Shown piece after piece: positions 14,420 through 47,968 of a DNA stretch of 64,000 nucleotides. The DNA lies in IMG/VR virus record IMGVR_UViG_3300037110_000087, positions 186,001-250,000 of that record. The stretch is one strand, 5' to 3'. A model generated the notes under the pieces. The model was not told where the DNA came from, did not search any database, and saw only the letters and a list, made by a program, of their open reading frames with translations. A program made the translations under genes and the position numbers. The stretch's first letter is position 1, and every line of letters begins with the position of its first letter.

Positions 14420-14435
14420 GATAAATTCCAAAGAA

Positions 14436-14454
14436 AAGGCCCTTACGGGGCCTT
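14436..14454 (-). terminator. Rho-independent terminator
   Basis: AAGGCCC-loop-GGGCCTT followed by T-rich tract on minus strand. Confidence 0.6.
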
Positions 14455-15143: not shown

Positions 15144-15177
15144 TGGAGTTCTCCTACAGGCTTTTAACCCGACTTCC

Positions 15178-15207
15178 ATTATATCATGCGAAAGTATTCC
15201 GTGTCAA
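15178..15207 (-). promoter_or_regulatory. sigma70 promoter
   Basis: TTGACA-N18-TATAAT. Confidence 0.75.
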
Positions 15208-15834: not shown

Positions 15835-15852
15835 AGCTAGCCCCCATTTTAC

Positions 15853-15881
15853 AGTGTAGCGCAAGGGGAGCTAGCTGTCAA
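15853..15881 (-). promoter_or_regulatory. sigma70-like promoter
   Basis: TTGACA-N17-TACACT. Confidence 0.6.
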
Positions 15882-15887
15882 TTTTAT

Positions 15888-16298
15888 CTAGGGCAGGAGA
15901 GCGACTCCCCCGGTGACGAGAGCCTGTTCCTGAGAAAGGACGGCCATGGCACGAAGGATTACATCGGCCTTGCCCTGGTGTAATACAAAGGATGAGGCGT
16001 TATTTCGATCGTAACCCCCAGGGTAATCCAATCGAGCAATATGTTTCATTTCGAGAATTTCACTAACTGGTTTATCAAAACCTTCGATAGCGACTCTCTG
16101 CTCTACAGTGAAGGTCTTATCCGGATCAGTGACGACGAAGTGAAGCTCAATACCTACGAGAGCCTCAACCTTAAAGCTCATATTTTCGACTTTGACTCTA
16201 GCGTTTTCCAGAAATTCCTGAAATGAAAATTCGACTACACCCTCGGCTGAGTCTACGATGAAGTTCTGTTCGAAGGGAATAGCACGTGGTTGCTGCAT
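15888..16298 (-). CDS. hypothetical protein
   Basis: ORF. Confidence 0.6.
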   Translation of the reverse strand: MQQPRAIPFEQNFIVDSAEGVVEFSFQEFLENARVKVENMSFKVEALVGIELHFVVTDPDKTFTVEQRVAIEGFDKPVSEILEMKHIARLDYPGGYDRNNASSFVLHQGKADVILRAMAVLSQEQALVTGGVALLP

Positions 16299-16431
16299 TA
16301 AAACATTCCCAAGATCTTATCAAGTAACTGTCTGGCCCGATCTTCCTGTTCATTTGCTGGAAGATAACCAATAAGACTGATAGCTGCCTCTATGTATGCC
16401 ACTTTCTGTTCTTCTGACATGTTTGCTCCTA

Positions 16432-16641
16432 TTACTCGTCCGCGACGAGTTCAAATGTTTCCACTCTTGTAACCTCTTCCTCAAGAGGATCATGATAATT
16501 GACAACATTGAATAGATCGACATCATCGTCTGCGTCAATCTGTTCCTTGTACCCTTCGTACTTTTCTCTTGTCATCCTGATCGTTTGGTCGAATTCGACC
16601 CTAGCCCGACAGACAATGTGAACGGTTACCATTTCGCTCAT
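16432..16641 (-). CDS. hypothetical protein
   Basis: SD AGGAG. Confidence 0.6.
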   Translation of the reverse strand: MSEMVTVHIVCRARVEFDQTIRMTREKYEGYKEQIDADDDVDLFNVVNYHDPLEEEVTRVETFELVADE

Positions 16642-16649
16642 GGTTTCTC

Positions 16650-16967
16650 CTATTTAAGAATCGGGAACAGGTTGAGATCCCTCAGGTCCTTTACGGTCAG
16701 CCTTTGATAGTCGACATAGAGCCGAGAAATTTCCTCCAACAAGTTCACTCTGGCCATCTCCACCTTGGTTCCATAGCTTTCAGTTACTGCATCAGACTTA
16801 GCATGACTGACAATACTGAAAATCTTCCCAAGGTCTGCGGCTTTGAAACTATCAAGATTGTCCTGGACCTCTCGGAACCATTTATCGGATGCCAAAGGTA
16901 GATCACCAGTGGCAATAAGGATATCTAGGTCGGTTTGATTTCGAATTGTGTTGAGAAGGCTTGGCAT
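16650..16967 (-). CDS. hypothetical protein
   Basis: ORF directly after SbcD-like gene; start uncertain. Confidence 0.5.
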   Translation of the reverse strand: MPSLLNTIRNQTDLDILIATGDLPLASDKWFREVQDNLDSFKAADLGKIFSIVSHAKSDAVTESYGTKVEMARVNLLEEISRLYVDYQRLTVKDLRDLNLFPILK

Positions 16968-16968
16968 A

Positions 16969-17985
16969 CTAATTAGCATGATTTTTGATAATCTCCTGGG
17001 CTTCTTTAACAGCCATTTCGATGATTTCTGGTTCAAGTTTATTACGTTCCAGTACAGTGTTTAGACCTGATAGTGGATCACCAAAGTCAATCTGATTGTC
17101 GACCACAATCTCTTCCGCTGTGGTATCCTGCTTCTCTTCAAGCAGCTGGATACTAATTACGTTCGTAGGATAAGCATAATCAAGGAACTTGCTAATGGTC
17201 TGGACCCGATAAAGGACCGCAGGGTTGAAGTCCGGGAGCTTGTCATAAATCTTCTCAGTCTTTAGTGGGATTGCGGAGATTAACGGAACTTGCTCTCTTT
17301 GTCTGGTGTCGGTGTCGTAGATCTCAAATCCCTTCTGTCCACCCTCACCAAAATTAAGTTGGCAAATGCTACCAGGATAGAAGGCATTACTACCAATAGC
17401 CTGTCTCAGATGAATATCACCTAAGAACCATTGTTTGATCCGATCGGCTCGATAATTGAACTCCCAGCCTTTCATGGCCTGAGAGTGATTATCATAAAAG
17501 CAACCCTTGGCTGCATAATGGGCTACTACGTGATCGATCTCAGGATCAGTATCTAGGGTTTCACTGATTCTCCCAGTGAACATATGAGATGCCCATAATA
17601 CTCTACCGAAACATTCATTGGTCGCTTCAAGATCTAAGTGCCATTTGATGTTGGAATGGGTGCAGAACGCTCTGGCTGGGTGAAGACAGGTAATATGAGC
17701 GTCAATATCTTCATGATTTCCACTAATAATATTGACCTGAGCCTGTTCTGCAAGTGTGAGCAAGAACCAAGCCAACAAATTGTATTCCTTACTGGTGGGC
17801 TTGTTTTTGTCCAGTAGATCACCACCAAGAATTACGTAAGTAATATTGCTGGTAATGATCTTATCAATAATTTCTTGGAGGACTTTTTTATGTCTCTGAA
17901 GGTAAAATGGACTCTCTGCTTCAAGATCACTATACCATTGACGACCACTTCCGATATGAATATCTGCGATGAAAGCTAATTTCAT
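16969..17985 (-). CDS. SbcD/Mre11 (T4 gp47-like) nuclease subunit
   Basis: ADIHIG, GGDLLD, SGNHE, VAH, LGDIH, YPGSICQLNFGE. Confidence 0.85.
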   Translation of the reverse strand: MKLAFIADIHIGSGRQWYSDLEAESPFYLQRHKKVLQEIIDKIITSNITYVILGGDLLDKNKPTSKEYNLLAWFLLTLAEQAQVNIISGNHEDIDAHITCLHPARAFCTHSNIKWHLDLEATNECFGRVLWASHMFTGRISETLDTDPEIDHVVAHYAAKGCFYDNHSQAMKGWEFNYRADRIKQWFLGDIHLRQAIGSNAFYPGSICQLNFGEGGQKGFEIYDTDTRQREQVPLISAIPLKTEKIYDKLPDFNPAVLYRVQTISKFLDYAYPTNVISIQLLEEKQDTTAEEIVVDNQIDFGDPLSGLNTVLERNKLEPEIIEMAVKEAQEIIKNHAN

Positions 17986-25051: not shown

Positions 25052-25510
25052 CTACTCCTCAGCCCATCCAGTGGACAGAGGTTCCCAATATTCCTGACCG
25101 AAGAATAGCTGGTGGCCAAGCAAATTGTCACGGAAATCTCTAACCCATTCCACACCCTTGTGCTTCTTCATCCCGGTAGCCAAGGTGACATGAGGTAAGT
25201 AGGAGGTAAAAGAATCAACTCCACCGCGATCAATCCAAGCGTTGTGTAATGCCTCGATTCCAGTGCTTTTAATCTTCGCAACTAAATAACCAAGCCGGTC
25301 ATGACCATCCCAGTATTGCAAACTGATGATTTGACCACGGTAGCACATGGCGGGACGAATATAGATAGAAGGATTCGGCACAGTCACTTTGCTGTAAAGA
25401 AGAGTAATATGGAGCGATTTGGGCAAGTGAATCGGTGTGCCCACTAGCTTCTGTCTGAGTAATTTCTCAGATTCCTGTCTCACCTTCAGTGCAACAAATG
25501 TCCCTGCCAT
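25052..25510 (-). CDS. 2H phosphoesterase (Acb1/T4 57B-like)
   Basis: two HxT motifs: LHITLLYSK and YLPHVTL. Confidence 0.75.
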   Translation of the reverse strand: MAGTFVALKVRQESEKLLRQKLVGTPIHLPKSLHITLLYSKVTVPNPSIYIRPAMCYRGQIISLQYWDGHDRLGYLVAKIKSTGIEALHNAWIDRGGVDSFTSYLPHVTLATGMKKHKGVEWVRDFRDNLLGHQLFFGQEYWEPLSTGWAEE

Positions 25511-25983
25511 TATGATTCCTTTTCTACTTTAGCCCTACCACCTGCGTCATACTTCTTAGTGATTTCTTCACCCTTTTTGATATCTTTGATGGTTTTGACT
25601 TCCACAAAGTCCTTGCCAATGACCTGCTTGGCATTTGGATGGTCGTCGTGGTTGAGCATTACAAAATAGCTAAGGCCGATTGGATTCTTGCCCTTAAACA
25701 GTTTAACTTGACTGAGCTTTTCCTTCTCACTCTTAGCGAACGGGTAATTGACTGGACCAAAAGGCATTGCATGGGTATCATACCATTTGAAACCATATAG
25801 ATCCACGAGCTTGGAATCCTTCATCAGCTTCCAGTCCTCGTCGGAGATCATGGACACCTTATCATGACAAATCACTGTACCCGAAGGGATGTCCTTGGCA
25901 GCAAATAAACCATTGCCCTTACCGGGAGAGACTTTCACACAGACTAGGCCCTTGTCTACTTCAGCGATCAAATGCAGTTTCAT
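25510..25983 (-). CDS. SET-domain lysine methyltransferase with Ala7 leader (MKLHLIA)
   Basis: KGNGLFAAKDIPSG, LNHDDHPNA, DIKKGEEITKKYD; ATGA overlap with holA-like stop. Confidence 0.85.
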   Translation of the reverse strand: MKLHLIAEVDKGLVCVKVSPGKGNGLFAAKDIPSGTVICHDKVSMISDEDWKLMKDSKLVDLYGFKWYDTHAMPFGPVNYPFAKSEKEKLSQVKLFKGKNPIGLSYFVMLNHDDHPNAKQVIGKDFVEVKTIKDIKKGEEITKKYDAGGRAKVEKES

Positions 25984-30057: not shown

Positions 30058-32121
30058 CTACATCCCCAACATCTTGAAGAAGTCGGCTTCGGACACGATC
30101 TTGATCCCTGCGGCCTTGGCTTTCTTCATCTTGCCGCTGGTGGAGTCCATTTCGGCGGTGACCAGCATGGTGACGCTGGGCCGGAAGTCTTCTTCGATCC
30201 TGGCACCCTGCTTGGCCGCGAGATCCTGCATCCGCTTGCGGGTGAAACGCTCACCCTTGTCGTCGCAGCGTTCGATCTTGCCGGTGAACAGGAGGGTATC
30301 TCCCATCAGCACCATTTCGCCCTTGACCTGACTGCGTGGATCACCGTTACCGAAACCGGGCATGGGAGCCTCCTTGAGTTGGTTGAAGAGTGGATGGAAA
30401 TCGACGGTGGGAGGGAGTTCTTTTTCGTTGATCTTGATGGCTTCGAGCAGCGCTTCGATCATGGGCCGCGCCCTCTGGATGCCCTTCACGATAGTGTAGG
30501 CTTTCTTATCCTTGTAGCCGCCGACACTCAGCAGATAGGTAGCAGTCAGGCTGAACCAGCCATCGATGGTGTCGATGCCGGTCTTCTCCATGATGATCTC
30601 GCATTCCCTGCGGCCTAGAAACTTGATGCAGACCGAACCCATGAGATCGTTGAGATCGCAGTTCCTTGATTTGTTGATCTCACCGATGATACGATGAGCG
30701 TTCGCGGTTCCCAGCACCCCATTGCCCACCCTCACACGCTCCAGGGTGCTGTAGGTCAACTTGTAGAGATCCTGGGGCTGGGTCACAGTGCCGTTGTCGT
30801 AGAGAGCCTGGAGCAGGACGTCACCGATGAACAGGATGTTGCGCTTGGTGATCCACTGTTTGACCACCTGTATGCCCCGACCTTCGCAGGACTCGTTGAT
30901 GCATTTGGTCGAAGCACCATCCACGACCAGTGGTTCGTCACAGAAGGGACAGGTGCTGGGAGCCACGATCAGTTCACCGATGCGCTCTTTGGTCTGGTGG
31001 TCGTAGCGGGGGAAGACTTCCTTGATGTGGGGAATCACACCACCGGCCCGTTCGATGACCACCTTGTCACCGATACAGACACCACCCAGTTCCATGAGGT
31101 AGGGGAAGTTGTTGGCCAGGACGGACTTGCAGGTCACACCCTGGATGTCCACCGGATTGTATTTGAGGGTGGGGATGATGGCCCCAGTGCTGCCGATGGT
31201 GAGTTCCACACCAATGATGGTGGATTCGGCGGTGTCATTGGCGAACTTGATGGCCTTCTGCCCCTTCGGGCAGTTGTCGCTGCTCATGCCCAGGGTCTTC
31301 TGCGCTTGGACGCTGTTCATCTTGACCACGGTGCCATCGGCTTCGTAGTCGAACTCGTCCCGGTTGGTGACGAAGTAGGTCTTGAAGGCATTCTGGATGC
31401 CAACAGCGTCCTGGCAGAAGATGGACTCGACAGGCCGGAATCCCAGGTTCCGCATGAACTCGATGCGCATCTGCTCCGTGGGATAGACCCAGCGGCCATC
31501 CAGGGGGTCCAGCGGCTCATATTCGAAGACGATGAGATCCAGGTGACGGGCGAGGTTGGTTCCCTTCTGGTCGCGGACGACCGCCACCGAATTGCGGCAG
31601 GTCTTGTGACCCAGCGGCTGGAAGAACTCCGTATACTTGGTCTTGCTTAGCAGCAGTTCACCCCTCACATCGCCAGTGAAGGGAACTGGAAGCCGCTTAG
31701 GGATCGAGGGGATGTTCACGGCATTGAATAGCACGGACTCCCCGACCTCACCATCACCCCTGGTAGCCGCTTCGGTCAAGCAGCCATCGGTGTATTGGAG
31801 GACGAGGGTCATGCCATCGAGCTTCCATTCCTGGAGGTAGCCATCGGTGGGCCGGATGTTGTCCTTGACCCAGTTCTTGATCTCGTCAGGCGACTTGAGT
31901 TTGTCTTGGCTCCCGGCGACGATCCGGTGGGTGACCTTCCTGGCATCCACCGGGACCTTGGCCCCGACCTTCCTGGAATAGGGGTGATTGGGTTCCAGGG
32001 CGCAGAACCGCTCTGCCATCCGGTCATATTCGTTGTCGGACAGGATGGGCTTGACCCGCACATAGTAGTCGTGGTCTGCCTGGAGCAGCTTCGGGAGGAG
32101 GGCTTCGGCCTCTTTGTTCAT
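30058..32121 (-). CDS. ligA: NAD-dependent DNA ligase
   Basis: YY...SDNEYD, KLDG, TRGDG, VRGE, DGTVVK, RAGGVIP, CPFC Zn finger, HhH, C-terminal BRCT. Confidence 0.95.
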   Translation of the reverse strand: MNKEAEALLPKLLQADHDYYVRVKPILSDNEYDRMAERFCALEPNHPYSRKVGAKVPVDARKVTHRIVAGSQDKLKSPDEIKNWVKDNIRPTDGYLQEWKLDGMTLVLQYTDGCLTEAATRGDGEVGESVLFNAVNIPSIPKRLPVPFTGDVRGELLLSKTKYTEFFQPLGHKTCRNSVAVVRDQKGTNLARHLDLIVFEYEPLDPLDGRWVYPTEQMRIEFMRNLGFRPVESIFCQDAVGIQNAFKTYFVTNRDEFDYEADGTVVKMNSVQAQKTLGMSSDNCPKGQKAIKFANDTAESTIIGVELTIGSTGAIIPTLKYNPVDIQGVTCKSVLANNFPYLMELGGVCIGDKVVIERAGGVIPHIKEVFPRYDHQTKERIGELIVAPSTCPFCDEPLVVDGASTKCINESCEGRGIQVVKQWITKRNILFIGDVLLQALYDNGTVTQPQDLYKLTYSTLERVRVGNGVLGTANAHRIIGEINKSRNCDLNDLMGSVCIKFLGRRECEIIMEKTGIDTIDGWFSLTATYLLSVGGYKDKKAYTIVKGIQRARPMIEALLEAIKINEKELPPTVDFHPLFNQLKEAPMPGFGNGDPRSQVKGEMVLMGDTLLFTGKIERCDDKGERFTRKRMQDLAAKQGARIEEDFRPSVTMLVTAEMDSTSGKMKKAKAAGIKIVSEADFFKMLGM

Positions 32122-32141: not shown

Positions 32142-32171
32142 ATTATACCACGGAGGGGGTATTTCTGTCAA
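32142..32171 (-). promoter_or_regulatory. sigma70 promoter for ligA
   Basis: TTGACA-N18-TATAAT. Confidence 0.75.
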
Positions 32172-32502: not shown

Positions 32503-32531
32503 ATTATAACACCAAACAATTTAATTGTCAA
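32503..32531 (-). promoter_or_regulatory. sigma70 promoter with extended -10
   Basis: TTGACA-N17-TATAAT, TGT before -10. Confidence 0.85.
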
Positions 32532-32540: not shown

Positions 32541-32918
32541 TTAATTAGGCTTTCTGCTAAATCTGGCTACTTGTGTAATCTGTATAAACTGGTCAGGATG
32601 AGCCAGAACATCAGCCGCATCCCTAGCCACATTGGGGTTATATTGTTCAAATGAACCACCATGCCCAATGGTCAAATGACATTCAGTCTTCCCCATACAC
32701 AGTGTAATCAGATTCTTGGGATCTAATTCCATTGAAGGTTGATCATGGAAAGGCATTTTATGATGAACCTGGAGAAAGATGGTTCCACCGCAAGCAGCAC
32801 ACTTAGGCTGAGTTATCAAGAAAGCCTTTCTCACTCCGGACCACTTGCTACTGCGTGTTACTACCTTGATAATGTGTTCTCTAATGAGAGAATGTACTAC
32901 TCTTAAAATGTGTCCCAT
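32541..32918 (-). CDS. HNH endonuclease
   Basis: CAACG...VHH...NLITLC...CHLTIGH. Confidence 0.85.
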   Translation of the reverse strand: MGHILRVVHSLIREHIIKVVTRSSKWSGVRKAFLITQPKCAACGGTIFLQVHHKMPFHDQPSMELDPKNLITLCMGKTECHLTIGHGGSFEQYNPNVARDAADVLAHPDQFIQITQVARFSRKPN

Positions 32919-34502
32919 TTATTTTCCTTGATTCTTCCTTAGTGTAACAGGATCAGCCGTATAATAATCAATAAATTCCAAACCAAATGAATTACAATAG
33001 GTTGTAGCCATTTCGGTACTGGCGAATCGCATCATTGGTTCAAGCTCACGCCATCTACTCCGTCTAATAGTCATGGCATAATCAAATCCATTATTAGCAA
33101 AGAATCGGGCCGGAACCGCCCGGCAGGTGATCCATTTTACTTCAGTGAGTGCTTCTTCTACCTCTGTCTCTGGCTTCTTTAGGCCAAGTGCAGCTAGAAT
33201 CATCCCTTCAAATTCTGGATCAGCTTTGGGCCTACCATAACTTACCCCTTCTTGAGTGACCTCAGCATCTTCATCAGCCAATGGCCACCAATTAGATATA
33301 ACTTGAATAACGCTTACATGAGTAAACTGATGTTTGAGGAGCAATTCTCTGAAGATCTCCCGCCAGTTGGCTGGATGACCTAGGGATACTATTCTTGAGA
33401 AACGATTAGCAGGTAATTCAGATAAATTTTCAACTGTGAAATTATCACCGAGATATTCATCCACGACTCTCTTCGCATATCCAGGCTCTTGCTCTTTCAA
33501 CATCTCCACTTGCCAGATATCAAGATCGCCACCATGGACATGAGGGAAGGCTTCCCTATAGGGCAAAGTCGAAGTCAAGATCGCCATCAGATATAATTCT
33601 TCTTCGCCCAACTGCTGCAGCCAGCTGGAAAGTGACTTACCCGCGAATTCGGTGATTTCATAGAACATCATCGCCATGACACCGAGTTTGTCAGTATAAG
33701 CGAAATATCTATCCAATTTGACTGTTGACGGTGTAGCGAACTCGTCCAGGAAAAAATTAATATGTTCCTTGTTTAGTAGTTCCTCCATGATTTCTTTTAG
33801 ACCTTCAGCAGAATGCCCACTACCTGAAGAAGACATCATTACGCCTATTGGGGGTAATAACTGTCCAAGGCGATGATCATCACACCATCTAGTCAGGGTA
33901 TCCGCTCCTCCAAAGAATTCCTCATCTGTCACATCTTTCAATTGGCCTGTTGGCGCATGAAATTGAGCATAATTCCTACCATTCTTGCGGATCACATAAA
34001 GAGGACCCTGTTCCAGAAGCCCCGGAGCGTGTTCCTCTTGGGTCGTACACCAATTAGTCCCTGAGCCTAAGGCTCTCGCTGCTGGGAAAGTTGTGGCCTT
34101 ATAGACCGTCCAAATACCTTCCTCAAGCACGATCTCAGATCCTTCTGCCACATCCTGTTTAATTTTGTCTCGGACTTCCTGTTTCTTACTTGGGCCAAGC
34201 AGACCTTGATATCCCTGGAGCAAAGTGAATAGTTTCCCAGGTGTGTAGTCAAGAATATTCTTGGAATCAATGAATAAGGGCTTGTTCTTGACTGTATCAA
34301 AGTCCTTCAGTTGCTGCTTGATTTTATCGAAGTCAGACTCCAATATACGCCCAGCGGCGAATTCTCTGCACAACCACGCGATGTAGCTTGATTGCGGATT
34401 GTCAAGAGCAATGAGCTTGTCCATAGTCTCTAGATCAAGGTCGAACTTCTTCATAAAGAAATCCTTCTTGGGTTGGTTAATGGCGAAATACAGAGTTATC
34501 AT
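32919..34502 (-). CDS. GTxWCT-domain paralogue 4 (leader MITLYFA)
   Basis: shared N-terminal module YxxWLC...FDxxKxKPxFxDSKNI...GSGTNWCT. Confidence 0.8.
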   Translation of the reverse strand: MITLYFAINQPKKDFFMKKFDLDLETMDKLIALDNPQSSYIAWLCREFAAGRILESDFDKIKQQLKDFDTVKNKPLFIDSKNILDYTPGKLFTLLQGYQGLLGPSKKQEVRDKIKQDVAEGSEIVLEEGIWTVYKATTFPAARALGSGTNWCTTQEEHAPGLLEQGPLYVIRKNGRNYAQFHAPTGQLKDVTDEEFFGGADTLTRWCDDHRLGQLLPPIGVMMSSSGSGHSAEGLKEIMEELLNKEHINFFLDEFATPSTVKLDRYFAYTDKLGVMAMMFYEITEFAGKSLSSWLQQLGEEELYLMAILTSTLPYREAFPHVHGGDLDIWQVEMLKEQEPGYAKRVVDEYLGDNFTVENLSELPANRFSRIVSLGHPANWREIFRELLLKHQFTHVSVIQVISNWWPLADEDAEVTQEGVSYGRPKADPEFEGMILAALGLKKPETEVEEALTEVKWITCRAVPARFFANNGFDYAMTIRRSRWRELEPMMRFASTEMATTYCNSFGLEFIDYYTADPVTLRKNQGK

Positions 34503-34509
34503 GTCGTTC

Positions 34510-35877
34510 CTAATTATAGTCGCACCAATCAGTCATTACCTGGGCTTTGATGGGATCAACCACCCCTAGAGTTCGTAACTGTTCGTTTCTGAGCCACTCC
34601 GGATTGGATTCCATCGCTTCCATTTCTTCCAGGCTCCAACCTTCCTTGGGATCGACCTTGGTTGACTTTGGAGGAATATCGTCCTCTCTGACTACTATGC
34701 CCAGATATTCTAAGCAAGTTGCAAAATCCTCGTTGACGGATTCTATCTCGTCTGCCTTGGCAACCCAATCATTAACATAATTAACAGCGAACTTGGTAAG
34801 AGGATCGACCCTTTCCGGATTGGCCTCCATATCTACTTCCCGTTCCTCCGGAATACGAACGTAATATTTTACTGCTGTCATAGGGTCGGAGTGAATGAAG
34901 TTCAGAAGTCGAGTCAGCTGGCGTCCCGGTTTTCCTACAAAGACGGCCATTAATTCAAGGGCTGCTTCACTATCATGAGTTTCCTCGATTCTGTCTATGA
35001 GTTTATCAAAGATTTTCTTATTGAATTCCAGTCTGCCAAAAGTGGATTCATCTTGTTCCCAATCCAAATATTCCTGGTAGTAATCGAGGATCATCAAAGG
35101 ATTTTTTGGCAGAAGGCGTTGTACTCGCTCCATGAAGACCCATTGATCATCGTCGGAGTCGAAATAATCCACCTGCCCGATGTCGATAGGGAGCTTTTCT
35201 ATCCGCTTGAGGATTTTCAGATAGCCCAAACCCGAAGAATCTGGAGCAATGAACATGAATTTGATATCACCTGCTGACTCGTCGGCTGGGTTCATATATT
35301 GCATTTCTTTGCCCAAATGAAACTGGTATATTGGCTTCCCTTCGTATGCCTCTGCATCGGGGCCACCATACGCGATATAAACGGGTCCCTGCGCCAAGTA
35401 TTCTGTGGCGAAAGACCGCTGAGTGGTGCACCAGTGGGTTCCAGATCCCATGGTTACAACATCCTCGGGTCTGATGCATTTATACCAAGTGATTTCTCTA
35501 TCTTGATAAATAATTGTGGCTTGAGTCTTTTTCTCTCTCTTCTGCTGTTCGGTTGGTTTGCTGATCTCTGACTCTTTGTAAGTATCCAGGACTTTGTAGA
35601 GATCGTTAATTTTCTTGTATGAATCGATGTTTTTAGAGTCTTTGAACAACGGTTTATTTTTGATTTTATCAAATTTGGCGAGACTGTCCCTGATGATCTT
35701 GGTATCCTGAGGCAATCGTATGAAATCGACCTGACGACAAAGATAATCAAGGTAGGAACTATTAGGAGTGGAATCACATGCATCGAGAAGATCCACTAGC
35801 TTGGGATCCAGTTGGTATTTATTAATAACGAATTCCTTCTTATCCGGATTGGCAACGGCGAAATGTAATGTGATCAT
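34510..35877 (-). CDS. GTxWCT-domain paralogue 3 (leader MITLHFA)
   Basis: DSTPNSSYLDYLC, RLPQDT, TEQQKREKK, GSGTHWCT. Confidence 0.8.
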   Translation of the reverse strand: MITLHFAVANPDKKEFVINKYQLDPKLVDLLDACDSTPNSSYLDYLCRQVDFIRLPQDTKIIRDSLAKFDKIKNKPLFKDSKNIDSYKKINDLYKVLDTYKESEISKPTEQQKREKKTQATIIYQDREITWYKCIRPEDVVTMGSGTHWCTTQRSFATEYLAQGPVYIAYGGPDAEAYEGKPIYQFHLGKEMQYMNPADESAGDIKFMFIAPDSSGLGYLKILKRIEKLPIDIGQVDYFDSDDDQWVFMERVQRLLPKNPLMILDYYQEYLDWEQDESTFGRLEFNKKIFDKLIDRIEETHDSEAALELMAVFVGKPGRQLTRLLNFIHSDPMTAVKYYVRIPEEREVDMEANPERVDPLTKFAVNYVNDWVAKADEIESVNEDFATCLEYLGIVVREDDIPPKSTKVDPKEGWSLEEMEAMESNPEWLRNEQLRTLGVVDPIKAQVMTDWCDYN

Positions 35878-37163
35878 TATTGTCCCATCCTTCTGAAAGC
35901 TGATGAAGCCATCTCAGGATTCAGGATAAGCCCATCTGGAGCCTCTCCAAAATCCATGAAACAGCAGCAGCAATAAAAATCATCGTCATAAGGCCAATCA
36001 TGCACGGCCATGCTCTCGTATTTCTTTGTGTACTCGTTAATTATCCCAGCAGCTGCTTCTCGGAGACGTTTAATGGATTCTTTTGGTATATCGTCTTCGT
36101 CAGACTCGCTCCGTATGTAATATCTAATAGAGGCCATGTCGTCAGATTTTATCAGAGCGTAGAGTCTGGTATACTGAGCGTCATCGAATTCCATGTGTGG
36201 ACCATGGAAAGTCAGCAGTTCCACGGCTTCATCTGTATTGTTGGTTTCCTCGATTTTACGGAGTAGCATTTCTGGCATACCATCAAGAAGCGTGTCAGGT
36301 ATACTGTCAAGAAAATCTTCTAATTCTTCAATCCCGCCAAGCTGAACACATTCCCAGAAGACCGAAATCATCAAGGGATTCTGAGGTAGTAGATTATAAA
36401 TCCCCTCCCATTGTTCAACCGTGGGATCAAGGGATTCACCCTGTTTATAATAGGTTCCATCAGAAGGAAGGAGCATTGATAAATTCTCTGCCTTCATAAG
36501 CAGGCCAACTGGCTGCCTGAATGAATGAACTAAATCGGCCATCATCAACCTGATACCACGGGCTAGTGGAACATCTTCTGCATTCATGATCTGCAGATAT
36601 TTGCCCAAATGCAACTGGATCGTTGGCTTACCGGCTTTATTTAGATAGCAAATGTAAATAGGATTCTCTTTGAGATATTGATTGGCGACCTTCTTGTTTG
36701 GGACGGTACACCATTTTGTCCCAGATCCCATGACAGCAGCTTGTTCTGGTGTCTCGATCTTGTACCAAGTCATGATCGAATCTTTATAAACAACCTGAGC
36801 ACCGCACTTCATCTCTCTTTTCTGCTGTTCCGTTGAATCGGCCACTCCAGTTTCTTCGTAGGATTTGAGTGTCTTGTAGAGGTCCCCCAATTTCTTGTAG
36901 TGATAAATATCCTTGGAATCCTTGAACTTCGGTTTTTTCTTGTAAGAATCAAAGAGGGCGAGGGCTTCAAGAATGATCCCGGTGTCCTGGGGCAGACGCA
37001 TGTTCTTCTGCGAATACTGACCGCATAACCAATCTACGAAATCTTTTTTCGGAGTCGGGTCACAAGCATCAATCAGATGCAGATCCCTCTCCGTCAAACT
37101 ATACTTCCCTTTCAGGAATTCTGTTTTCTCCGGTTTGATCACAGCGAAGTGGAGGGTGATCAT
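35877..37163 (-). CDS. GTxWCT-domain paralogue 2 (leader MITLHFA)
   Basis: DPTPKKDFVDWLC, RLPQDT, TEQQKREMK, GSGTKWCT. Confidence 0.8.
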   Translation of the reverse strand: MITLHFAVIKPEKTEFLKGKYSLTERDLHLIDACDPTPKKDFVDWLCGQYSQKNMRLPQDTGIILEALALFDSYKKKPKFKDSKDIYHYKKLGDLYKTLKSYEETGVADSTEQQKREMKCGAQVVYKDSIMTWYKIETPEQAAVMGSGTKWCTVPNKKVANQYLKENPIYICYLNKAGKPTIQLHLGKYLQIMNAEDVPLARGIRLMMADLVHSFRQPVGLLMKAENLSMLLPSDGTYYKQGESLDPTVEQWEGIYNLLPQNPLMISVFWECVQLGGIEELEDFLDSIPDTLLDGMPEMLLRKIEETNNTDEAVELLTFHGPHMEFDDAQYTRLYALIKSDDMASIRYYIRSESDEDDIPKESIKRLREAAAGIINEYTKKYESMAVHDWPYDDDFYCCCCFMDFGEAPDGLILNPEMASSAFRRMGQ

Positions 37164-38858
37164 CTAGACCATTCCTTGGAAGCAAGCATCCGCGAACTCT
37201 GGGTCGTCAAGACCAAATTTAGCTAGCTTTGCCATTTTCTGGTCCTCGTTCATTTCTACATTGAAGAAGGCGGGAAGATCCATGATGTATCCATAAGCAT
37301 AACGATACTCATTATCCCAAGGAGGACCACCATCCTCATTAACTGGAGCCACATTCTGTAAGGCTTTATACTTTTTAGTATAGTCATTGACCGTCTGGAT
37401 GGCGTATTGCTTGATCGGCCATTTCATATCTCGTGGGATTTCCTGATCCAGGTTGATGCTATACAAAAGAGTTGCGTAACAATCAGCATAAATCAATCCC
37501 ATCAATCTTGATTGCTGGTCTTTTGTGAATCTTTCCCAGAGCGATCGTTCACCTTCATTATAATCATCAACTAACAGGTGAACAACACCCTCGTAATCTT
37601 CTCTTTTCTCGTAGTCCGCTACGAGAACCTCGAGTAGTTCGTCAGAAAATCCGCCCACTGGTACTGCCTCTTCTGGGACTTCCCCTCTACCACAAGCGAT
37701 ATTGAATTTACCGACCATATGCAGATTCTGGGGCAACAGATCGTAGATTTTCTTCCATTGGTCTACAGAAGGGTAAGGGACTTCCCCTCTTCGTTTCACC
37801 GCGTATTCTTCAATTGGTTCTAGAAAAATTGGCAAGTGTTCTACATCTTTGAGTATTTCAATGGCTTCCTTGAGTTTGCTATCACTAGTACAGAAAGGTT
37901 CCTTCAGATCAGCCAACATAAAGCAGATTCCTCTCACCGCCAATTCATCGAGAGGGTTCATAATCTGAAGGTGTTTGCCTAGGTGAAGCTGTAGGACCGG
38001 TTTGCCTTCAACATAACAAATATAAATGGGATTCTGCCCGACATACTCATTTGCGGTGCCTAGCTGGGTTGTGCACCATTTTGTACCCGAACCTAAGACG
38101 ACCGCTTGACTGCCAGTAACACATTTGTACCATGTCATTTGTCCATCTTTGTACACTACCTTGGCATTACTCTTCTTTTCTCTTTTCTGCTGTTCGGTGG
38201 AGTCCGTTGTTATCCCGGTATTCTCGTAGGATTCGAGGGCCTTGAATAACTCACCCTTAGTCTTGTATGAATCGAGGTTCTTTGAATGGTTGAACTTTGG
38301 CTTGTCTTTGATCTGATCAAACGAATCTAGAGCATCACGCATGATTTTGGTATCCTGCGGAAGGATTAATTCATCAAATCTACGGCACAACCAATCCAAA
38401 TACCGAGCGTTGGGAGTTGGATCACACTTCTCCAGAAGATCCAGATCCTTCTCTTCTAGGCTATACTTCCTGAGCAAAGCCGCTCTTTTCTCAGGTGTCG
38501 CATCAGCTCTTATCGCAAAAGATAGCTTGACTCTTGACATATACTGAGGAGTGTTGATCCAATCTACGACAGGCGACAGATGAATGTTATGAAGCGGTTC
38601 TCTCTTTTCGTGTTCAACCGTGGGCTTACCATCCAGGTTGAGATAAAATGCCACTTCACCGTTGTAAGAACCAAATGTCAGGCTGGGGTTAATTCCATAA
38701 GACAAGAATAACTTGGCTAGCTCATTCTGCTTGAATTTCAACCTGAGCAGATCATCACCAGTAGCCACGAAGTCTACACCACCTAGATCAGACACTAGTA
38801 CATCACAACCACATTGTATGAAGATGCTCTTGATTATGATGACGAAGTTCGATGGCAT
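37164..38858 (-). CDS. GTxWCT-domain paralogue 1 with extra N-terminal domain (internal VKLSFA motif; possible start 38540)
   Basis: DPTPNARYLDWLC, LPQDT, TEQQKREKK, GSGTKWCT. Confidence 0.8.
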   Translation of the reverse strand: MPSNFVIIIKSIFIQCGCDVLVSDLGGVDFVATGDDLLRLKFKQNELAKLFLSYGINPSLTFGSYNGEVAFYLNLDGKPTVEHEKREPLHNIHLSPVVDWINTPQYMSRVKLSFAIRADATPEKRAALLRKYSLEEKDLDLLEKCDPTPNARYLDWLCRRFDELILPQDTKIMRDALDSFDQIKDKPKFNHSKNLDSYKTKGELFKALESYENTGITTDSTEQQKREKKSNAKVVYKDGQMTWYKCVTGSQAVVLGSGTKWCTTQLGTANEYVGQNPIYICYVEGKPVLQLHLGKHLQIMNPLDELAVRGICFMLADLKEPFCTSDSKLKEAIEILKDVEHLPIFLEPIEEYAVKRRGEVPYPSVDQWKKIYDLLPQNLHMVGKFNIACGRGEVPEEAVPVGGFSDELLEVLVADYEKREDYEGVVHLLVDDYNEGERSLWERFTKDQQSRLMGLIYADCYATLLYSINLDQEIPRDMKWPIKQYAIQTVNDYTKKYKALQNVAPVNEDGGPPWDNEYRYAYGYIMDLPAFFNVEMNEDQKMAKLAKFGLDDPEFADACFQGMV

Positions 38859-39280: not shown

Positions 39281-39307
39281 ATCGGGCCTCCAATTTGGAG
39301 GCCCGAT
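39281..39307. terminator. hairpin between convergent genes
   Basis: ATCGGGCCTCCA / TGGAGGCCCGAT. Confidence 0.6.
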
Positions 39308-39313: not shown

Positions 39314-40333
39314 CTAGTTGATCAGAACAGTGACAATCAAACTGTCGAACAGGTGCATCACCTGCTTGGCCTGGGCATCAGTCAATTTCGGACTGAAGAT
39401 CGTGTCGGTCATGTGCTTGATGATGGCTTGCTTGATCGGTGAGGGGTCCACGATCTCTGAATAAGAAGAGGGGGCAGGCTTGGGTGCGGGTGCCGGTTTT
39501 GGTGCCGCATGAACGGGTGCCGCAGGGACAGCCTTGACTGGAGGAGCAGGTGCCTCGGGCAACATCGTTCCTGCTAAAATCTCCACTGGGGGAGCGGCCT
39601 TGACCGGAGCAGGGGCAGGAATAGCGGCCTTGGCCGGAGCAGGAAGCACCGGAGCGGGGGCATTAGGCAACTTGTGACCATTGCCGTTACCATTGCCCTT
39701 GTTGTCCGCTCTCTTTTCCTTGTTTGCCTTGCCAGTGAGATTGCCGGTCACACCAGCCGCCCTACGGATCAGTTCTTGATCGGAAGCGACTGGAATGGAT
39801 TCGTCGATCGGCAATTTGATGGCCTGGAAGAAATTCGTCCGTTCCGAGATAGAAAATTTCCTCCGTTCCCATTCAGCGGGGCTGAGGATATTGCTCTTCG
39901 CTCCCATTGCTTTGGACAGTTTCTCTTGGGAAAGCCCCGAAGCGATTCGATAATCCCTGAGTTTATCGCCCCATTTGGCTGTTTCGATTGAAGTCATATC
40001 GACCACCTTTCGTTGATGTGGAATGATTTGATTTCCCAATTCCGATCTTTTCATCGCCGGACCAAGGCTGTGTTGTTTTCCATCTGCTGATTCGTTGGGG
40101 ATTCCCCTAACTATCTCAGCCAACTCAGTCTCACTGAAACCCCGCTTCTTGAGAAATCCAAGGATCTCCTTAGCATTCTCCCCAGCGTATTCTTGAGTGA
40201 CATTGACACGAAATTTGTTGATGAAAGTCTTGGTCGTGAGAAATAACGGAATGGAGGGTTTGACCTTCTGGTATCGAAGTGGATGATCCAGGGCCAAGAA
40301 CTGTTGCATTTTGACCATGACTCCCTCATACAT
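39314..40333 (-). CDS. XRE-family HTH protein with Pro/Ala-rich linker
   Basis: LRDYRIASGLSQEKLSKAMG; PAPA-rich segment. Confidence 0.65.
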   Translation of the reverse strand: MYEGVMVKMQQFLALDHPLRYQKVKPSIPLFLTTKTFINKFRVNVTQEYAGENAKEILGFLKKRGFSETELAEIVRGIPNESADGKQHSLGPAMKRSELGNQIIPHQRKVVDMTSIETAKWGDKLRDYRIASGLSQEKLSKAMGAKSNILSPAEWERRKFSISERTNFFQAIKLPIDESIPVASDQELIRRAAGVTGNLTGKANKEKRADNKGNGNGNGHKLPNAPAPVLPAPAKAAIPAPAPVKAAPPVEILAGTMLPEAPAPPVKAVPAAPVHAAPKPAPAPKPAPSSYSEIVDPSPIKQAIIKHMTDTIFSPKLTDAQAKQVMHLFDSLIVTVLIN

Positions 40334-42116: not shown

Positions 42117-42700
42117 CGCTTCGACTTTCCCTTGATGCCCATGCCTTTTAAGAAATCGTCGTCGCTCTGAATCAACTTCTTGTGGACCAGGAAGAGATAG
42201 GTGTAAAGCTGGTATGCCTCCATTCCCTGCCACTCCTCTGGAAGCGCGTCAAAACTATTGTCTGGAAGGGTTTCACCATAGGCGTTGCATTCTTCCTGAG
42301 TGAATCCAGCCGCTTCTCTTTTCTTGTCCCATTCCTCAGCTAACTCATCCAGTCCATAAGGATCGGGATATTGTTCAAAATAGTCATATTCATTAAGGAT
42401 TTGAACCTTATAAACTTTTTCAAGTTTAGCTACAATAGATGCAACCCATTCAGGATGAGACATGTTCTGTCCCCAAGCAGAAAAACTACTGACAGTTCCA
42501 TCACTACTGGGATAAGCCCAAAGCCAGCCTTTTCCATTTGTAAGGCCCAAAGCCCCGTTTTCCTCTTTGCCCACCCAAATTCTATGTTTCTCTCTGGTTA
42601 ACTGTCGGAGACTATCGAAGGGGATTTTTCCCTCGTCATCAGGAATCAACATATAGGCAGTGTCTGCCGTTTTAACGAATGCTTTAAGATATAGTTTCAT
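42113..42700 (-). CDS. hypothetical protein with Ala7 leader (MKLYLKAFVKTA)
   Basis: ATG 42700 after GGAG; overlaps end of upstream gene. Confidence 0.65.
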   Translation of the reverse strand: MKLYLKAFVKTADTAYMLIPDDEGKIPFDSLRQLTREKHRIWVGKEENGALGLTNGKGWLWAYPSSDGTVSSFSAWGQNMSHPEWVASIVAKLEKVYKVQILNEYDYFEQYPDPYGLDELAEEWDKKREAAGFTQEECNAYGETLPDNSFDALPEEWQGMEAYQLYTYLFLVHKKLIQSDDDFLKGMGIKGKSKR

Positions 42701-43952
42701 TCTTCTCTCCGACACATTCAGGCCCAAACTTCTCAATGGCTTTTTTGAAATATTCCACCAGGGCCGGTGGGGTGGAGTCTTCTTGATATGATTTGCGTCC
42801 ATCGCTTATCACAGCATTACCAAGAACCAGCATCACACCATTTCGGAACTTCTTTTGATAATACTCACGTTCCATAAGCTGGTCGAACGCCTTGCCATAG
42901 ACTGGATCAATATCGGTCAGCATTGATGAACATCCTGGGTTCTCGCATCCAAACAAATCAGAGTAATCAGAATAGCCGTTCACTATGGGTCTATGATATT
43001 CATGACAGAAGCCACAATAAGCATCGTTGCAGAAACCACTGGTGTACCTGGGTTCGGTGCCATTCAACCACTTGACGAAATGCCAGGGTGCACGGAGACT
43101 ATTGCACCAGACTTGGCTCATACCACAACGACATACATACAAGATGCCATAAGGGTACTGATGGTTCGTATTGATTACTGGCTTCTCATCAGGAAGAAGA
43201 TAGCCATAGCAATGAGCACATCTCATCGAGTGTTCGTTTTTGAATTTGGCTGTCCTTAGAGAGGCATTCCTGGTTTGCAGTGGATGGATTTGCTCAGGGT
43301 AGAAAGCAATCCAGGCTTCTTCTCTATACTGTGCGCTATCATACCCTTCCGCTTTCAGCCCTGCCACTAAATTAATAAAGTTGGGATCACTCGGGCTGAT
43401 GTGAAGAGCACGAAGGTCTGCTGGATTTTCCACGGAAAGTCTTGCGGAGATAATCCTACCATTCGGTTGATCTTTAATTAGATCCCTACAGTAATTAATA
43501 TCTCGGTGGAACATTGCTGGGGTTCGGAAAGTCTCTAATTCTTTTGTAGTGCCATGGTAGACCACATCTGGGACTTTGAGACTTGCATTAATTCTAATCT
43601 GTAAGGGATGAATTTCAGTGACCATCGCTCTTACATTATCAACGTGATTTCTGACTAATGACTCAATCCGGTGTAACCCATCCCAGACATAATAATCATC
43701 TTTGTACTTGACAATCTCAGGCAAGTTGTGAAACTTCGTTACCTGTCTAAGTAATTCTACTTTCTTATCCTCTATCTTAGATTGGACGCTCTTTAACTCT
43801 TGGATGGGCAGGGTCTTCTTATAGGTAACTGAAGAATGATTCTTCAACGCCTTGGCAATTTCTTCCTCCAAACGACGCGAAGCTACCGGGAGAGTTGTTT
43901 CCGTATCCCAGTAAGCTTTTCTTTTTACCCTAGCAATTAAATATAATATCAT
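42684..43952 (-). CDS. Polyvalent protein: ParB-like - ART-like - Cys-rich domain; Ala7 leader (MILYLIA)
   Basis: VWDGLHRI; VVYHGT...LKAEGYDSAQY..EAWIAFYPEQI; multiple CxxC; repeated junction IHPLQxR(I)NASL. Confidence 0.7.
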   Translation of the reverse strand: MILYLIARVKRKAYWDTETTLPVASRRLEEEIAKALKNHSSVTYKKTLPIQELKSVQSKIEDKKVELLRQVTKFHNLPEIVKYKDDYYVWDGLHRIESLVRNHVDNVRAMVTEIHPLQIRINASLKVPDVVYHGTTKELETFRTPAMFHRDINYCRDLIKDQPNGRIISARLSVENPADLRALHISPSDPNFINLVAGLKAEGYDSAQYREEAWIAFYPEQIHPLQTRNASLRTAKFKNEHSMRCAHCYGYLLPDEKPVINTNHQYPYGILYVCRCGMSQVWCNSLRAPWHFVKWLNGTEPRYTSGFCNDAYCGFCHEYHRPIVNGYSDYSDLFGCENPGCSSMLTDIDPVYGKAFDQLMEREYYQKKFRNGVMLVLGNAVISDGRKSYQEDSTPPALVEYFKKAIEKFGPECVGEKNETIS

Positions 43953-43971: not shown

Positions 43972-44430
43972 TCATTTTCTTGTCACCAAATCCCAGACTC
44001 TGATTATCTTGTCGCCTCTCCGTATAGCTGCACAGACTCGATGGCAACCGAACCAGATTTCTCCATCTACCATAACACTTGGATTAGCTGTTGATCCTGG
44101 CAGACGAGAATAATCCTCAATCTTTTGAAAGTCCATTCCACAGAAAACATCAGGATTAGACTTGTTAAAATCCCATACATCAAGGAGGCTGTCGGGATCT
44201 TTAATAGCATCCCAATGAGGAAGATGCTGTTTGGCTAAGAATTCTGGTGTGAGTTCAACGGTTCGCGGAGTCCAATACCTCATGTGAATATTAGCGAATT
44301 CCCAACGATCGCTTAAAGAGCCATCAGGACGCTCCTCTTCGATTTCCCGCTGAAGCACTGGAGGGAATCTACGCATAATTTCCCTCCAGGTAGGAGGCTC
44401 TTCAATTGTGGCTTTCAGCATCAGTCTCAT
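43972..44430 (-). CDS. ParB/Srx-like protein with Ala7 leader (MRLMLKA)
   Basis: PSVMVDGEIWFGCHRVCAA; TG-C-TATAAT immediately upstream. Confidence 0.55.
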   Translation of the reverse strand: MRLMLKATIEEPPTWREIMRRFPPVLQREIEEERPDGSLSDRWEFANIHMRYWTPRTVELTPEFLAKQHLPHWDAIKDPDSLLDVWDFNKSNPDVFCGMDFQKIEDYSRLPGSTANPSVMVDGEIWFGCHRVCAAIRRGDKIIRVWDLVTRK

Positions 44431-47152: not shown

Positions 47153-47968
47153 CTATTTTTGCCTTCGTAGGTATTCTTCTTCTAAATCCCAACAGGGCAT
47201 ACTTCGGCGCGATCTTTCTATGCCCATGACTACCAAAGAGGATTTTTTTCTAATTCCCTCATTATCGGATAAATCTTGATATCTGGTTGTTATTCCTTTG
47301 ATCATTTTCTTTTGATTCGATTCATCCAAGCTGGCAAACAATAAAGAGTATTCTCTATCAACTAAAATGGACTCAATCACCTGTTTTACAGATCTAATTG
47401 GCTCGTTTGTTTCAACAAAAAGCGGATCTACCTTTTCAAAACAAATTTGACCTAAATGGCCTCTTACCTCAGAATCTTGATTAAAATAACTAATCATTTT
47501 ATCAGAGGTTTCTTTATTTTCCGCCTTTTCTTGCCTTTTTACATCCCTTTTACTTTTCGGAGAGTCCACCAGATGAGTCAGTTCGTGGACAATGACCGGC
47601 ATCAACCATTCTTTAATTAGCGAAGGTCTGCCCAAAGAAAAATAAAACATACCAATATGGTCAAGATTAAACCTGAAACTGATAGTTCCATCAGATTTGT
47701 TGGTCATCCCTTCAAAAGGCGAACCACCGGACGTATTTTTTCCCCCTACCAATTCACAGATCAAAGTTATTACTAAGTTCACTAGATCATGTTTGTAATC
47801 CATTAATTCAATTGATAGATCTAGGGTGTTTAACACTCCCGGTTTAGAAATCAAATTGATATTAGGAATACCAGAAACTAACTCTTTGAGAGCACTTAGA
47901 AGTCTGGCTTCCTTTTCGGCATCCAAACCCAAATCAATTGGACGAGTGGCTGTGATTCTTAGCTTCAT
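47153..47968 (-). CDS. Zincin metallopeptidase with Ala7 leader (MKLRITA)
   Basis: IVHELTH...YFNQDSEVRGHLGQI, similar to both zincin domains of 5713-8241. Confidence 0.7.
   Translation of the reverse strand: MKLRITATRPIDLGLDAEKEARLLSALKELVSGIPNINLISKPGVLNTLDLSIELMDYKHDLVNLVITLICELVGGKNTSGGSPFEGMTNKSDGTISFRFNLDHIGMFYFSLGRPSLIKEWLMPVIVHELTHLVDSPKSKRDVKRQEKAENKETSDKMISYFNQDSEVRGHLGQICFEKVDPLFVETNEPIRSVKQVIESILVDREYSLLFASLDESNQKKMIKGITTRYQDLSDNEGIRKKSSLVVMGIERSRRSMPCWDLEEEYLRRQK

What the first reader, a model, noticed from the sequence alone, without database searches (positions are those of the whole stretch)
32919..38858. Four tandem paralogues with a conserved GSGTxWCT module and divergent C-termini
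Seen: 6 kb of abutting genes sharing ~190 aa (DPTP..Y.DWLC, LPQDT, FD..K.KP.F.DSKNI..Y, TEQQKRE, GSGT[NHK]WCT, P.Y, QLHLG) and then diverging into acidic helical tails. All carry the leader motif. Inference: an expanded effector family with a possible catalytic Cys (loosely PcfJ/GNAT-like) and variable target-binding regions, a typical arms-race signature.
Basis: partly seen in the sequence, partly recalled or inferred. Interest (0 to 1): 0.6.

Follow-up and report, generated by a model that had tools for sequence, protein, structure and literature searches.

The report
Tandem WC-domain phage protein family
Four neighbouring genes of an uncultivated 307-kb peat phage belong to a very large, unnamed phage protein family, with an invariant Trp-Cys core and variable helical tails, that looks like a set of host-directed proteins carried in the virus particle; its biochemical function is unknown.

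Summary
Four abutting minus-strand genes (32919-38858) share a ~200-aa N-terminal domain with GSGTxWCT, followed by acidic all-helical tails. The window lies in a 307-kb IMG/VR jumbo phage from peat, which has two more paralogues elsewhere.

The domain matches no Pfam or PHROG family. A profile of the six copies still finds 7,272 cluster representatives (E<=1e-3), nearly all viral. Trp-Cys is invariant in 182 domain instances.

In other phages the domain also forms tandem arrays. It also occurs 2-5 times inside giant polyvalent-type proteins that carry ART-PolyVal, PARP or GNAT domains. The only homologue in a cultured phage, PA5oct EST35_0205, is a mass-spectrometry-confirmed virion protein.

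Fold searches give only weak partial GNAT-like matches (Z 5.2-6.5) and a run of PcfJ-like viral proteins (Foldseek E 5e-3 to 8e-2). Sequence tests for both families fail.

The "leader" is real. An N-terminal M-K-L-x-L-x-A-type peptide heads at least 14 unrelated proteins of this genome, including SET, NUDIX and ART-like enzymes, plus a looser version on the six paralogues. A second phage has its own leader, which resembles the T4 capsid-targeting sequence.

Best reading: modular, probably virion-packaged, host-directed proteins. The arms-race claim is untestable because dS is saturated.

The parts
37164..38858 (-). Paralogue 4 (P0004, 564 aa in the longest frame; the database gene call P0005 is 543 aa). 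Orphan N-terminal extension aa 1-106, core aa 107-311 (nt 37926-38540), acidic helical tail aa 312-564.
35877..37163 (-). Paralogue 3 (P0003, 428 aa). Core aa 1-205 (nt 36549-37163), helical acidic tail aa 206-428. AF2 core pLDDT is about 95.
34510..35877 (-). Paralogue 2 (P0002, 455 aa). Core aa 1-205 (nt 35263-35877); the tail is homologous to those of paralogues 3 and 4.
32919..34502 (-). Paralogue 1 (P0001, 527 aa). Core aa 1-200 (nt 33903-34502). It has a different tail with one weak RWPEAE-type repeat (aa 474-489) and belongs to a different subfamily in the tree.
36705..36728 (-). GSGTKWCT motif of paralogue 3 (aa 146-153). Equivalent motifs lie at 38070-38093, 35425-35448 and 34044-34067. 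W-C is invariant family-wide.
37140..37163 (-). N-terminal leader MITLHFAV of paralogue 3. Equivalent leaders lie at 35854-35877, 34479-34502 and, internal or at an alternative start, 38511-38540. The leader is unstructured in the AF2 models.
32541..32918 (-). HNH endonuclease gene that abuts the last paralogue with no spacer and is probably co-transcribed.
39281..39307 (-). Strong intrinsic-terminator-like hairpin (12 pairs, 8 GC) that ends the upstream unit, so the array starts a new transcription unit.

Best explanation
The four genes, plus two elsewhere in the genome, encode members of a large, unnamed phage-specific family of modular host-directed proteins. Each protein has three parts.

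(i) A short N-terminal leader peptide. This phage also places it on many unrelated enzymes.

(ii) A ~200-aa 'WC domain', made of a helical half and a small alpha/beta half that carries the invariant Trp-Cys.

(iii) A variable, acidic alpha-helical (repeat-like) tail.

Proposed mechanism (inferred, not shown). The leader targets the proteins into the assembling head, in the manner of the T4 capsid-targeting sequence. They travel in the virion and enter the cell with the DNA. There the variable tail selects a host or defence macromolecule, and the WC domain acts on it, most simply through its invariant cysteine (acyl- or thiol-type chemistry on a partial GNAT/PcfJ-like scaffold).

Having several divergent copies widens the range of targets. 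In other phages the same units are strung together in one giant polyvalent protein.
For: Shown:
- The six paralogues and their core.
- Family size: 7,272 representatives at E<=1e-3 and 3,191 at <=1e-10. The nearest Atlas clusters are essentially all viral.
- W151 and C152 are in 100% of 182 domains; Y163 98%, W45 96%, D35 94%.
- The domain is repeated 2-5 times in proteins of 1-2.7 thousand aa and co-occurs with ART-PolyVal, PARP and GNAT. Polyvalent proteins are predicted to be injected with the DNA (PMC5512222).
- Tandem arrays recur: 6 adjacent ORFs in a 250-kb contig and 3 in a 208-kb contig.
- Tails in those arrays are variable numbers of a ~33-aa RWPEAEP helical repeat. It is found in 69 of the 153 family proteins in hand, and as single copies in P0006, P0007 and (weakly) P0001.
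- PA5oct EST35_0205 is a member (hmmsearch E 6e-44). It is annotated 'structural protein, ESI-MS/MS' within a block of virion genes (PMC7318152).

Leader:
- 27/354 N-termini match against 8/1781 internal Met (p 2e-15).
- Leader-bearing proteins are unrelated by BLASTP and include SET, NUDIX and a weak ART-PolyVal match.
- Codons vary, so conservation is at the peptide level.
- The leader is disordered in both AF2 models.
- A second family-bearing phage has its own leader, M-[KR]-[ILF]-x-x-[ILF]-[ILTA], on 13/285 N-termini against 0/1369 internal Met. Its family members carry that version, and it encodes a T4 gp21-type protease.
- The T4 CTS precedent is in PMC9026906.
Against: - No protein of this phage has been shown in a virion. 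The single proteomic datum is a ~30%-identical homologue in an unrelated phage.
- The window's neighbourhood is DNA metabolism (LigA, RNR, HNH) with perfect sigma-70 promoters nearby, not structural genes.
- This genome has no Peptidase_S77 hit, although the same search finds it in three other family-bearing phages. A T4-type processing route is therefore not available here.
- Paralogue 4 has its leader 106 residues inside the longest ORF.
- The fold matches are below the level that proves homology (Z<8; hhalign to PcfJ probability 0.2%).
- His185 is not universal.
- No enzymatic function can be assigned.
Confidence: 0.4

Rival explanations
1. The proteins are cytoplasmic early or middle host-takeover or anti-defence proteins, made after infection and not packaged. 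The leader would serve another purpose, such as efficient initiation, folding or recognition by a phage chaperone or protease.
For: - The array sits among DNA-metabolism genes with consensus sigma-70 promoters close by.
- The six-gene array in the 250-kb contig lies next to a replicative-helicase-like gene.
- PcfJ, the nearest named structural look-alike, sits beside an AcrIIA9-family gene on pCF10.
- No S77 protease was found in this genome.
Against: - The PA5oct homologue is in virions.
- The domain is fused into polyvalent-type proteins that are predicted to be injected.
- Leader conservation is peptide-level and phage-specific. That pattern fits a targeting signal better than a translational effect.
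Confidence: 0.3
2. The proteins are non-enzymatic internal head or scaffold-like structural proteins. They would resemble the paralogous inner-body and ejection protein families of phiKZ/SPN3US-type phages. In this view the WC motif is structural, and the acidic tails interact with DNA-condensing or core components.
For: - The PA5oct homologue is annotated as structural.
- The proteins are tandem paralogues with N-terminal propeptide-like leaders and acidic tails.
- Ejection-protein paralogue families are known in giant phages (abstracts of PMC5694885 and PMC7411985, listed).
Against: - An invariant Trp-Cys across ~30%-identical sequences, and fusion with enzymatic effector domains, point to an activity rather than bulk structure.
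- Copy number and tail length vary widely between phages.
Confidence: 0.15
3. The domain is a divergent GNAT- or PcfJ-type enzyme that works on the phage's own DNA, nucleotides or proteins. It would be a housekeeping modification enzyme, duplicated for substrate range.
For: - GNAT-fold matches recur over residues 112-229 in two independent models.
- The neighbourhood is nucleotide and DNA metabolism.
Against: - No GNAT HMM hit.
- The domain stops after the equivalent of beta4/alpha3, and no conserved Q/R-x-x-G-x-G/A motif is visible.
- Housekeeping enzymes are rarely present in 6 divergent copies with variable repeat tails.
Confidence: 0.1

Closest known systems
PcfJ-like proteins (Pfam PF14284; prototype PcfJ of Enterococcus plasmid pCF10)
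   Same: - Both are proteins of mobile elements and phages with unknown function.
- Foldseek against BFVD lists at least 12 PcfJ-annotated viral proteins (E 5e-3 to 8e-2, probability 0.80-0.99, ~240-260 columns).
- hhalign puts W-C on PcfJ's H-C, and the following strands (GPLYI / TTIVF, PYAQ.H / PYFTLE) fall in the same order.
   Different: - No PcfJ HMM hit on any of 55 domain sequences at E<=1, nor in the genome at E<=10.
- hhalign probability is 0.2%.
- The motif is GTxWCT rather than HCVG.
- The N-terminal helical half and the tails are unrelated.
T4 internal proteins and Alt, which carry the capsid-targeting sequence (CTS)
   Same: - A short N-terminal peptide (~10 aa) is shared by otherwise unrelated proteins of one phage.
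- The cargo includes host-modifying enzymes.
- CTS-bearing sets are diverse and poorly conserved between related phages (PMC9026906).
- The second phage examined has M-K-I-x-E-I-I-x-E-type leaders and a gp21-type protease.
   Different: - In this genome the leader is M-K-L-x-L-x-A-x-V, with no consistent L/I-x-E site.
- No Peptidase_S77 or Gp23 match was found.
- Packaging and cleavage are untested.
Polyvalent proteins of phages and conjugative elements (Iyer et al. 2017, PMC5512222)
   Same: The WC domain occurs in proteins of 1,000-2,700 aa together with ART-PolyVal, PARP, GNAT, LRR and other domains, often in several copies. An ART-PolyVal-like gene lies 4 kb away in the window.
   Different: - Here the units are separate genes, not one polypeptide.
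- The domain matches none of the LPD or other polyvalent-protein domain models in Pfam.
- It is not mentioned under PcfJ or cysteine in that paper.
GNAT-fold acyltransferases (HAT1, RimL, SidF)
   Same: The alpha/beta half (residues ~112-229 of P0003) aligns to the N-terminal arm plus alpha3 of GNAT folds at Z 5.2-6.5, rmsd 3.4-3.7 A, 84-94 residues.
   Different: - Z is below the level that separates relatives from common arrangements.
- beta5-alpha4-beta6 is absent.
- No GNAT Pfam hit and no conserved pyrophosphate-binding motif.

Membership tests
PcfJ (PF14284) | Match to the Pfam PcfJ HMM above the gathering score | tested here: not met
   - No hit for the four proteins at E<=1.
- No hit for 55 domain sequences at E<=1.
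- No hit in the whole genome at E<=10.
- One weak PcfJ hit (E 1.7e-4) occurs in one of 32 giant family proteins; its location was not resolved.
PcfJ (PF14284) | Profile-profile similarity to the PcfJ C-terminal core (HCVG ... PYFTLE region) | tested here: inconclusive
   hhalign of A4 against 8 enterococcal PcfJ sequences gives the expected register, but probability is 0.2% and E is 0.29. The PcfJ profile was shallow (Neff 2.7).
PcfJ (PF14284) | Shared fold | tested here: inconclusive
   Foldseek against BFVD gives at least 12 PcfJ-annotated proteins at E 5e-3 to 8e-2, probability 0.80-0.99, but with TM 0.15-0.18. No PcfJ structure is in PDB to compare with.
GNAT acyltransferases | Match to GNAT Pfam models | tested here: not met
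GNAT acyltransferases | Complete GNAT fold (beta1-alpha1-alpha2-beta2-4-alpha3-beta5-alpha4-beta6) with the beta4-alpha3 Q/R-x-x-G-x-G/A motif | tested here: not met
   Only the N-terminal arm plus one helix aligns (Z 5.2-6.5). Conservation ends at D197, and no such motif appears in the 55-sequence alignment.
Polyvalent-protein-associated domains | Occurrence inside multidomain phage proteins that combine disparate effector domains | tested here: met
   - P0019 has ART-PolyVal (E 2e-52) plus the WC domain at 1254-1454.
- P0010 has five WC copies plus WG repeats.
- 3 of 32 giant members carry ART-PolyVal, 2 PARP and 1 GNAT.
Polyvalent-protein-associated domains | Match to a named LPD or other polyvalent-protein domain model in Pfam | tested here: not met
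T4-type CTS cargo (internal/ejected head proteins) | A short N-terminal peptide shared by unrelated proteins of the same phage | tested here: met
   - 27/354 N-termini against 8/1781 internal Met, p 2e-15.
- The proteins are unrelated by BLASTP.
- Conservation is at the peptide level, not the codon level.
T4-type CTS cargo (internal/ejected head proteins) | A gp21-type prohead protease (Peptidase_S77) in the genome and an L/I-x-E cleavage site after the leader | tested here: not met
   No S77 hit in this genome, although three other family-bearing phages have one. The leaders here mostly lack L/I-x-E.
T4-type CTS cargo (internal/ejected head proteins) | Physical presence in virions and removal of the leader | not testable with these tools
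   The only evidence is indirect: PA5oct homologue EST35_0205 is annotated as virion protein by ESI-MS/MS. The supplementary peptide data are not held.

The most novel reading that the evidence does not exclude
The M-K-L-x-L-x-A-x-V peptide is a previously undescribed, phage-specific sorting signal in a jumbo phage that lacks a T4-type prohead protease. It would mark a whole deliverable set of about 20 proteins, including the six WC-domain proteins, a SET methyltransferase, a NUDIX hydrolase and an ART-like protein. The WC domain itself would be a new cysteine-dependent enzyme superfamily, distantly tied to PcfJ, that phages diversify through repeat tails to hit different host targets.
Probability: 0.2. 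Interest if true: 0.75.

Novelty: new variant of a known kind. Interest (0 to 1): 0.5.

Why it matters
A domain present in more than 7,000 protein clusters, almost all viral, has no family name, no structure and no function. It is repeatedly amplified in jumbo phages and welded into giant effector proteins.

If the leader is a sorting signal, reading N-termini would give a cheap way to list the delivered proteins of uncultivated jumbo phages. It could also provide a tag for loading foreign proteins into their capsids.

Identifying the target and chemistry of the invariant cysteine could also give a first function for the long-orphan PcfJ group found on conjugative plasmids.

Tried and rejected
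- Pfam and PHROG scans of the four proteins, the two extra paralogues and 55 domain sequences gave nothing meaningful. There were only weak hits to phrog_17056 and phrog_28193, both of unknown function, for relatives.
- The word-index protein search found only the genome's own copies.
- The PDB sequence-profile search found nothing.
- Foldseek against PDB on two models gave no E<=1e-3 match.
- The ESM Atlas shape and feature searches returned only viral hypothetical proteins.
- dN/dS by region: dS is saturated, so no inference is possible. dN in the tail is about twice that in the core.
- tblastn of PA5oct head, neck and sheath proteins against this genome gave no hit, so the phage is not PA5oct-like.
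- Peptidase_S77 and Gp23 HMMs gave no hit in this genome.
- The Atlas search of the 106-aa N-terminal extension of paralogue 4 returned noise, RdRP fragments below 0.9.
- Literature searches for PcfJ function and for the motifs (RWPEAE, GTNWCT) found nothing useful.
- Sequencing-run search: the DNA occurs fully in one peat metagenome run, which is probably the source. There is no RNA holder, so expression could not be examined and read laying was not used.
Full report
**What is there.** The window is bases 186001-250000 of a 307,124-bp IMG/VR virus record, CheckV 98% complete. The DNA is held in full by one peat-metagenome run. On the minus strand four ORFs follow each other without intergenic space: 38858-37164, 37163-35877, 35877-34510 and 34502-32919. 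An HNH endonuclease gene (32918-32541) follows directly. A strong terminator-like hairpin at 39307-39281 closes the upstream unit. Core identity is 51-57% among the three upstream genes and 34-39% to the fourth. A search of the whole genome finds two more paralogues, of 714 and 745 aa, at 88.5 kb and 158.5 kb.

**Tails and history.**
- The tails are acidic (pI 4.2-4.9) and all-helical in an AlphaFold2 model.
- They are not unrelated. The tails of the three upstream genes are homologous at 25-30% identity, while the 527-aa protein has another tail.
- A maximum-likelihood tree of 55 core domains places those three in one clade (support 100/99). The fourth gene falls in a different subfamily. The two distant paralogues form a pair next to external sequences.
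- Synonymous sites between paralogues are saturated (dS undefined or >2). dN/dS therefore cannot test an arms race, and dN is about twice as high in the tails.
- The copies are old.

**The family.**
- Pfam, PHROGs and a PDB sequence-profile search give nothing.
- A profile of the six cores finds 7,272 cluster representatives at E<=1e-3 and 3,191 at <=1e-10. The nearest ESM-Atlas clusters are viral 'hypothetical proteins'.
- Across 182 domain instances in 151 proteins the Trp-Cys of GSGTxWCT is invariant. Y163, W45 and D35 are at or above 94%. The His of 'QLH' is present in only 71%.
- Many relatives are giant proteins with two to five copies of the domain, spaced 400-600 aa apart. Some carry ART-PolyVal, PARP, GNAT, LRR or WG-repeat domains. 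This is the polyvalent-protein architecture that Iyer et al. interpret as proteins injected with the DNA (PMC5512222).
- Separate-gene arrays recur as well. There are six adjacent ORFs in a 250-kb viral contig and three in a 208-kb one.
- In that six-gene array the tails are 4-10 copies of a ~33-aa 'RWPEAEP' helical repeat. An HMM of the repeat hits 69 of the 153 family proteins in hand. It also hits single degenerate copies in P0006, P0007 and, weakly, P0001.
- The typical plan is therefore leader, then WC domain, then a variable helical-repeat tail.

**Fold.** With 55 aligned sequences the core is modelled at pLDDT about 95 (a first model with 6 sequences gave 83). It has a helical half (10-120) and an alpha/beta half (beta-beta-alpha, the WC loop, alpha-beta-beta-beta, then a helix).
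- Foldseek against PDB finds nothing at E<=1e-3.
- VIA-align repeatedly lists GNAT-fold enzymes (SidF, HAT1, RimL and others) over residues ~112-229 at Z 5.2-6.5. The tail matches alpha-solenoids at Z 6-7.9. Both are below the tool's stated confidence range.
- Foldseek against BFVD first returns family members, including the PA5oct protein. It then returns a consistent run of at least 12 'PcfJ-like' viral proteins (E 5e-3 to 8e-2, probability up to 0.99).
- The pCF10 PcfJ C-terminus (…HCVG…PYFTLE…) lines up with …WCT…PYAQ.H… in hhalign, but without statistical support (probability 0.2%). The PcfJ HMM hits neither the domain nor the genome.
- I therefore treat 'distant PcfJ/GNAT-like scaffold' as a lead, not as membership.

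**The leader.**
- Three paralogues start MITL[HY]FA and the two distant ones start M[TS]FRFSA. Paralogue 4 has MSRVKLSFAI at residue 107 of its longest frame.
- At least 14 other proteins of the genome, with no BLASTP similarity to each other beyond it, start M-K/R-L-x-L-x-A-x-V/I.
- A loose pattern matches 27/354 N-termini against 8/1781 internal Met (p 2e-15).
- The codons differ, so the conservation is in the peptide. The residues are disordered in both models.
- Carriers include a SET-domain protein, a NUDIX hydrolase and a weak ART-PolyVal match.
- Family members in other phages also begin with short hydrophobic-patterned leaders.
- In the 250-kb contig a different leader, M-[KR]-[ILF]-x-x-[ILF]-[ILTA] and often ending I/L-x-E, heads 13/285 proteins against 0/1369 internal Met. 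Those 13 include the six family members. That phage and two other family-bearing phages encode a T4 gp21-type protease.
- This parallels the T4 capsid-targeting sequence, a 10-residue N-terminal tag that loads diverse proteins into the head (PMC9026906).
- In the present genome no S77 protease or Gp23 match was found, so any targeting route here would be of another type.

**Experimental anchor.** Among 50,697 phage records only PA5oct-like Pseudomonas jumbo phages carry the domain. PA5oct EST35_0205 (482 aa, E 6e-44 to the family HMM) is annotated 'structural protein, ESI-MS/MS' in a run of virion genes. The PA5oct paper reports 93 virion-associated products (PMC7318152). This phage is otherwise unrelated to PA5oct.

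**Verdict.** The best-supported reading (about 0.4) is a family of modular, probably virion-carried, host-directed proteins. The invariant cysteine is functional and the helical tails choose targets. The main rival (about 0.3) is the same kind of protein made and used only inside the infected cell. The biochemical activity is unknown. The family is not a known structural repeat and is a member of no named family, so I rate it a new variant of a known kind with moderate interest.

Noticed in passing
Whole genome. In the window: 2786-3265(+), 25510-25983(-), 42684-43952(-), 43972-44430(-), 47153-47968(-): At least 14 unrelated proteins start with M-K/R-L-x-L-x-A-x-V/I. Among them are a SET-domain protein, a NUDIX hydrolase (genome 37003-37497) and an ART-PolyVal-like protein. 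Leader-bearing genes tend to cluster, for example genome 157045, 157929 and 158500.
   Followed up: partly
L019 (IMG/VR contig of 249,994 bp), locus 8612-16589; whole contig in L037-L050: Six tandem family members all start MRL[RK]EF..LEYRRDVT and end in 4-10 RWPEAEP-type helical repeats. Another 7 unrelated proteins of that phage start M-K-I/F-x-x-I/F-I..E, much like the T4 CTS. They include an RCC1-repeat propeller and a GH19 hydrolase. The contig encodes a Peptidase_S77.
   Followed up: partly
window 32142-32171 and 32503-32531 (-): Two perfect 12/12 sigma-70 consensus promoters (TTGACA, 17-18 nt spacer, TG, TATAAT) lie just downstream of the array. One precedes the ligase gene and the other precedes a small ORF.
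   Followed up: no
window 30058-32121 (-): The NAD-dependent DNA ligase gene (adenylation, OB and BRCT domains) lies in a block of 57.7% GC, against ~42-50% elsewhere. This suggests a recent acquisition.
   Followed up: no
window 38541-38858 (-): A 106-aa in-frame extension lies ahead of paralogue 4, with no detectable relatives. A TATAAT and an AAGGA precede its ATG, whereas Met107 has no Shine-Dalgarno-like sequence. It is unclear whether this is a fused small gene or a 5' leader.
   Followed up: partly
window 32541-32918 (-): An HNH endonuclease gene abuts the last paralogue with zero spacer. It may be a homing-type element riding on the operon.
   Followed up: no
L036 (pCF10) 15874-17984: The prototype pcfJ gene overlaps by a few bases a gene annotated as Cas9 inhibitor AcrIIA9 family. 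This is an anti-defence neighbourhood for PcfJ.
   Followed up: no
window 39314-40333 (-): The protein has a weak HTH_3 match followed by a long Ala/Pro-rich low-complexity stretch. It lies immediately upstream of the array and is followed by the strong terminator.
   Followed up: no
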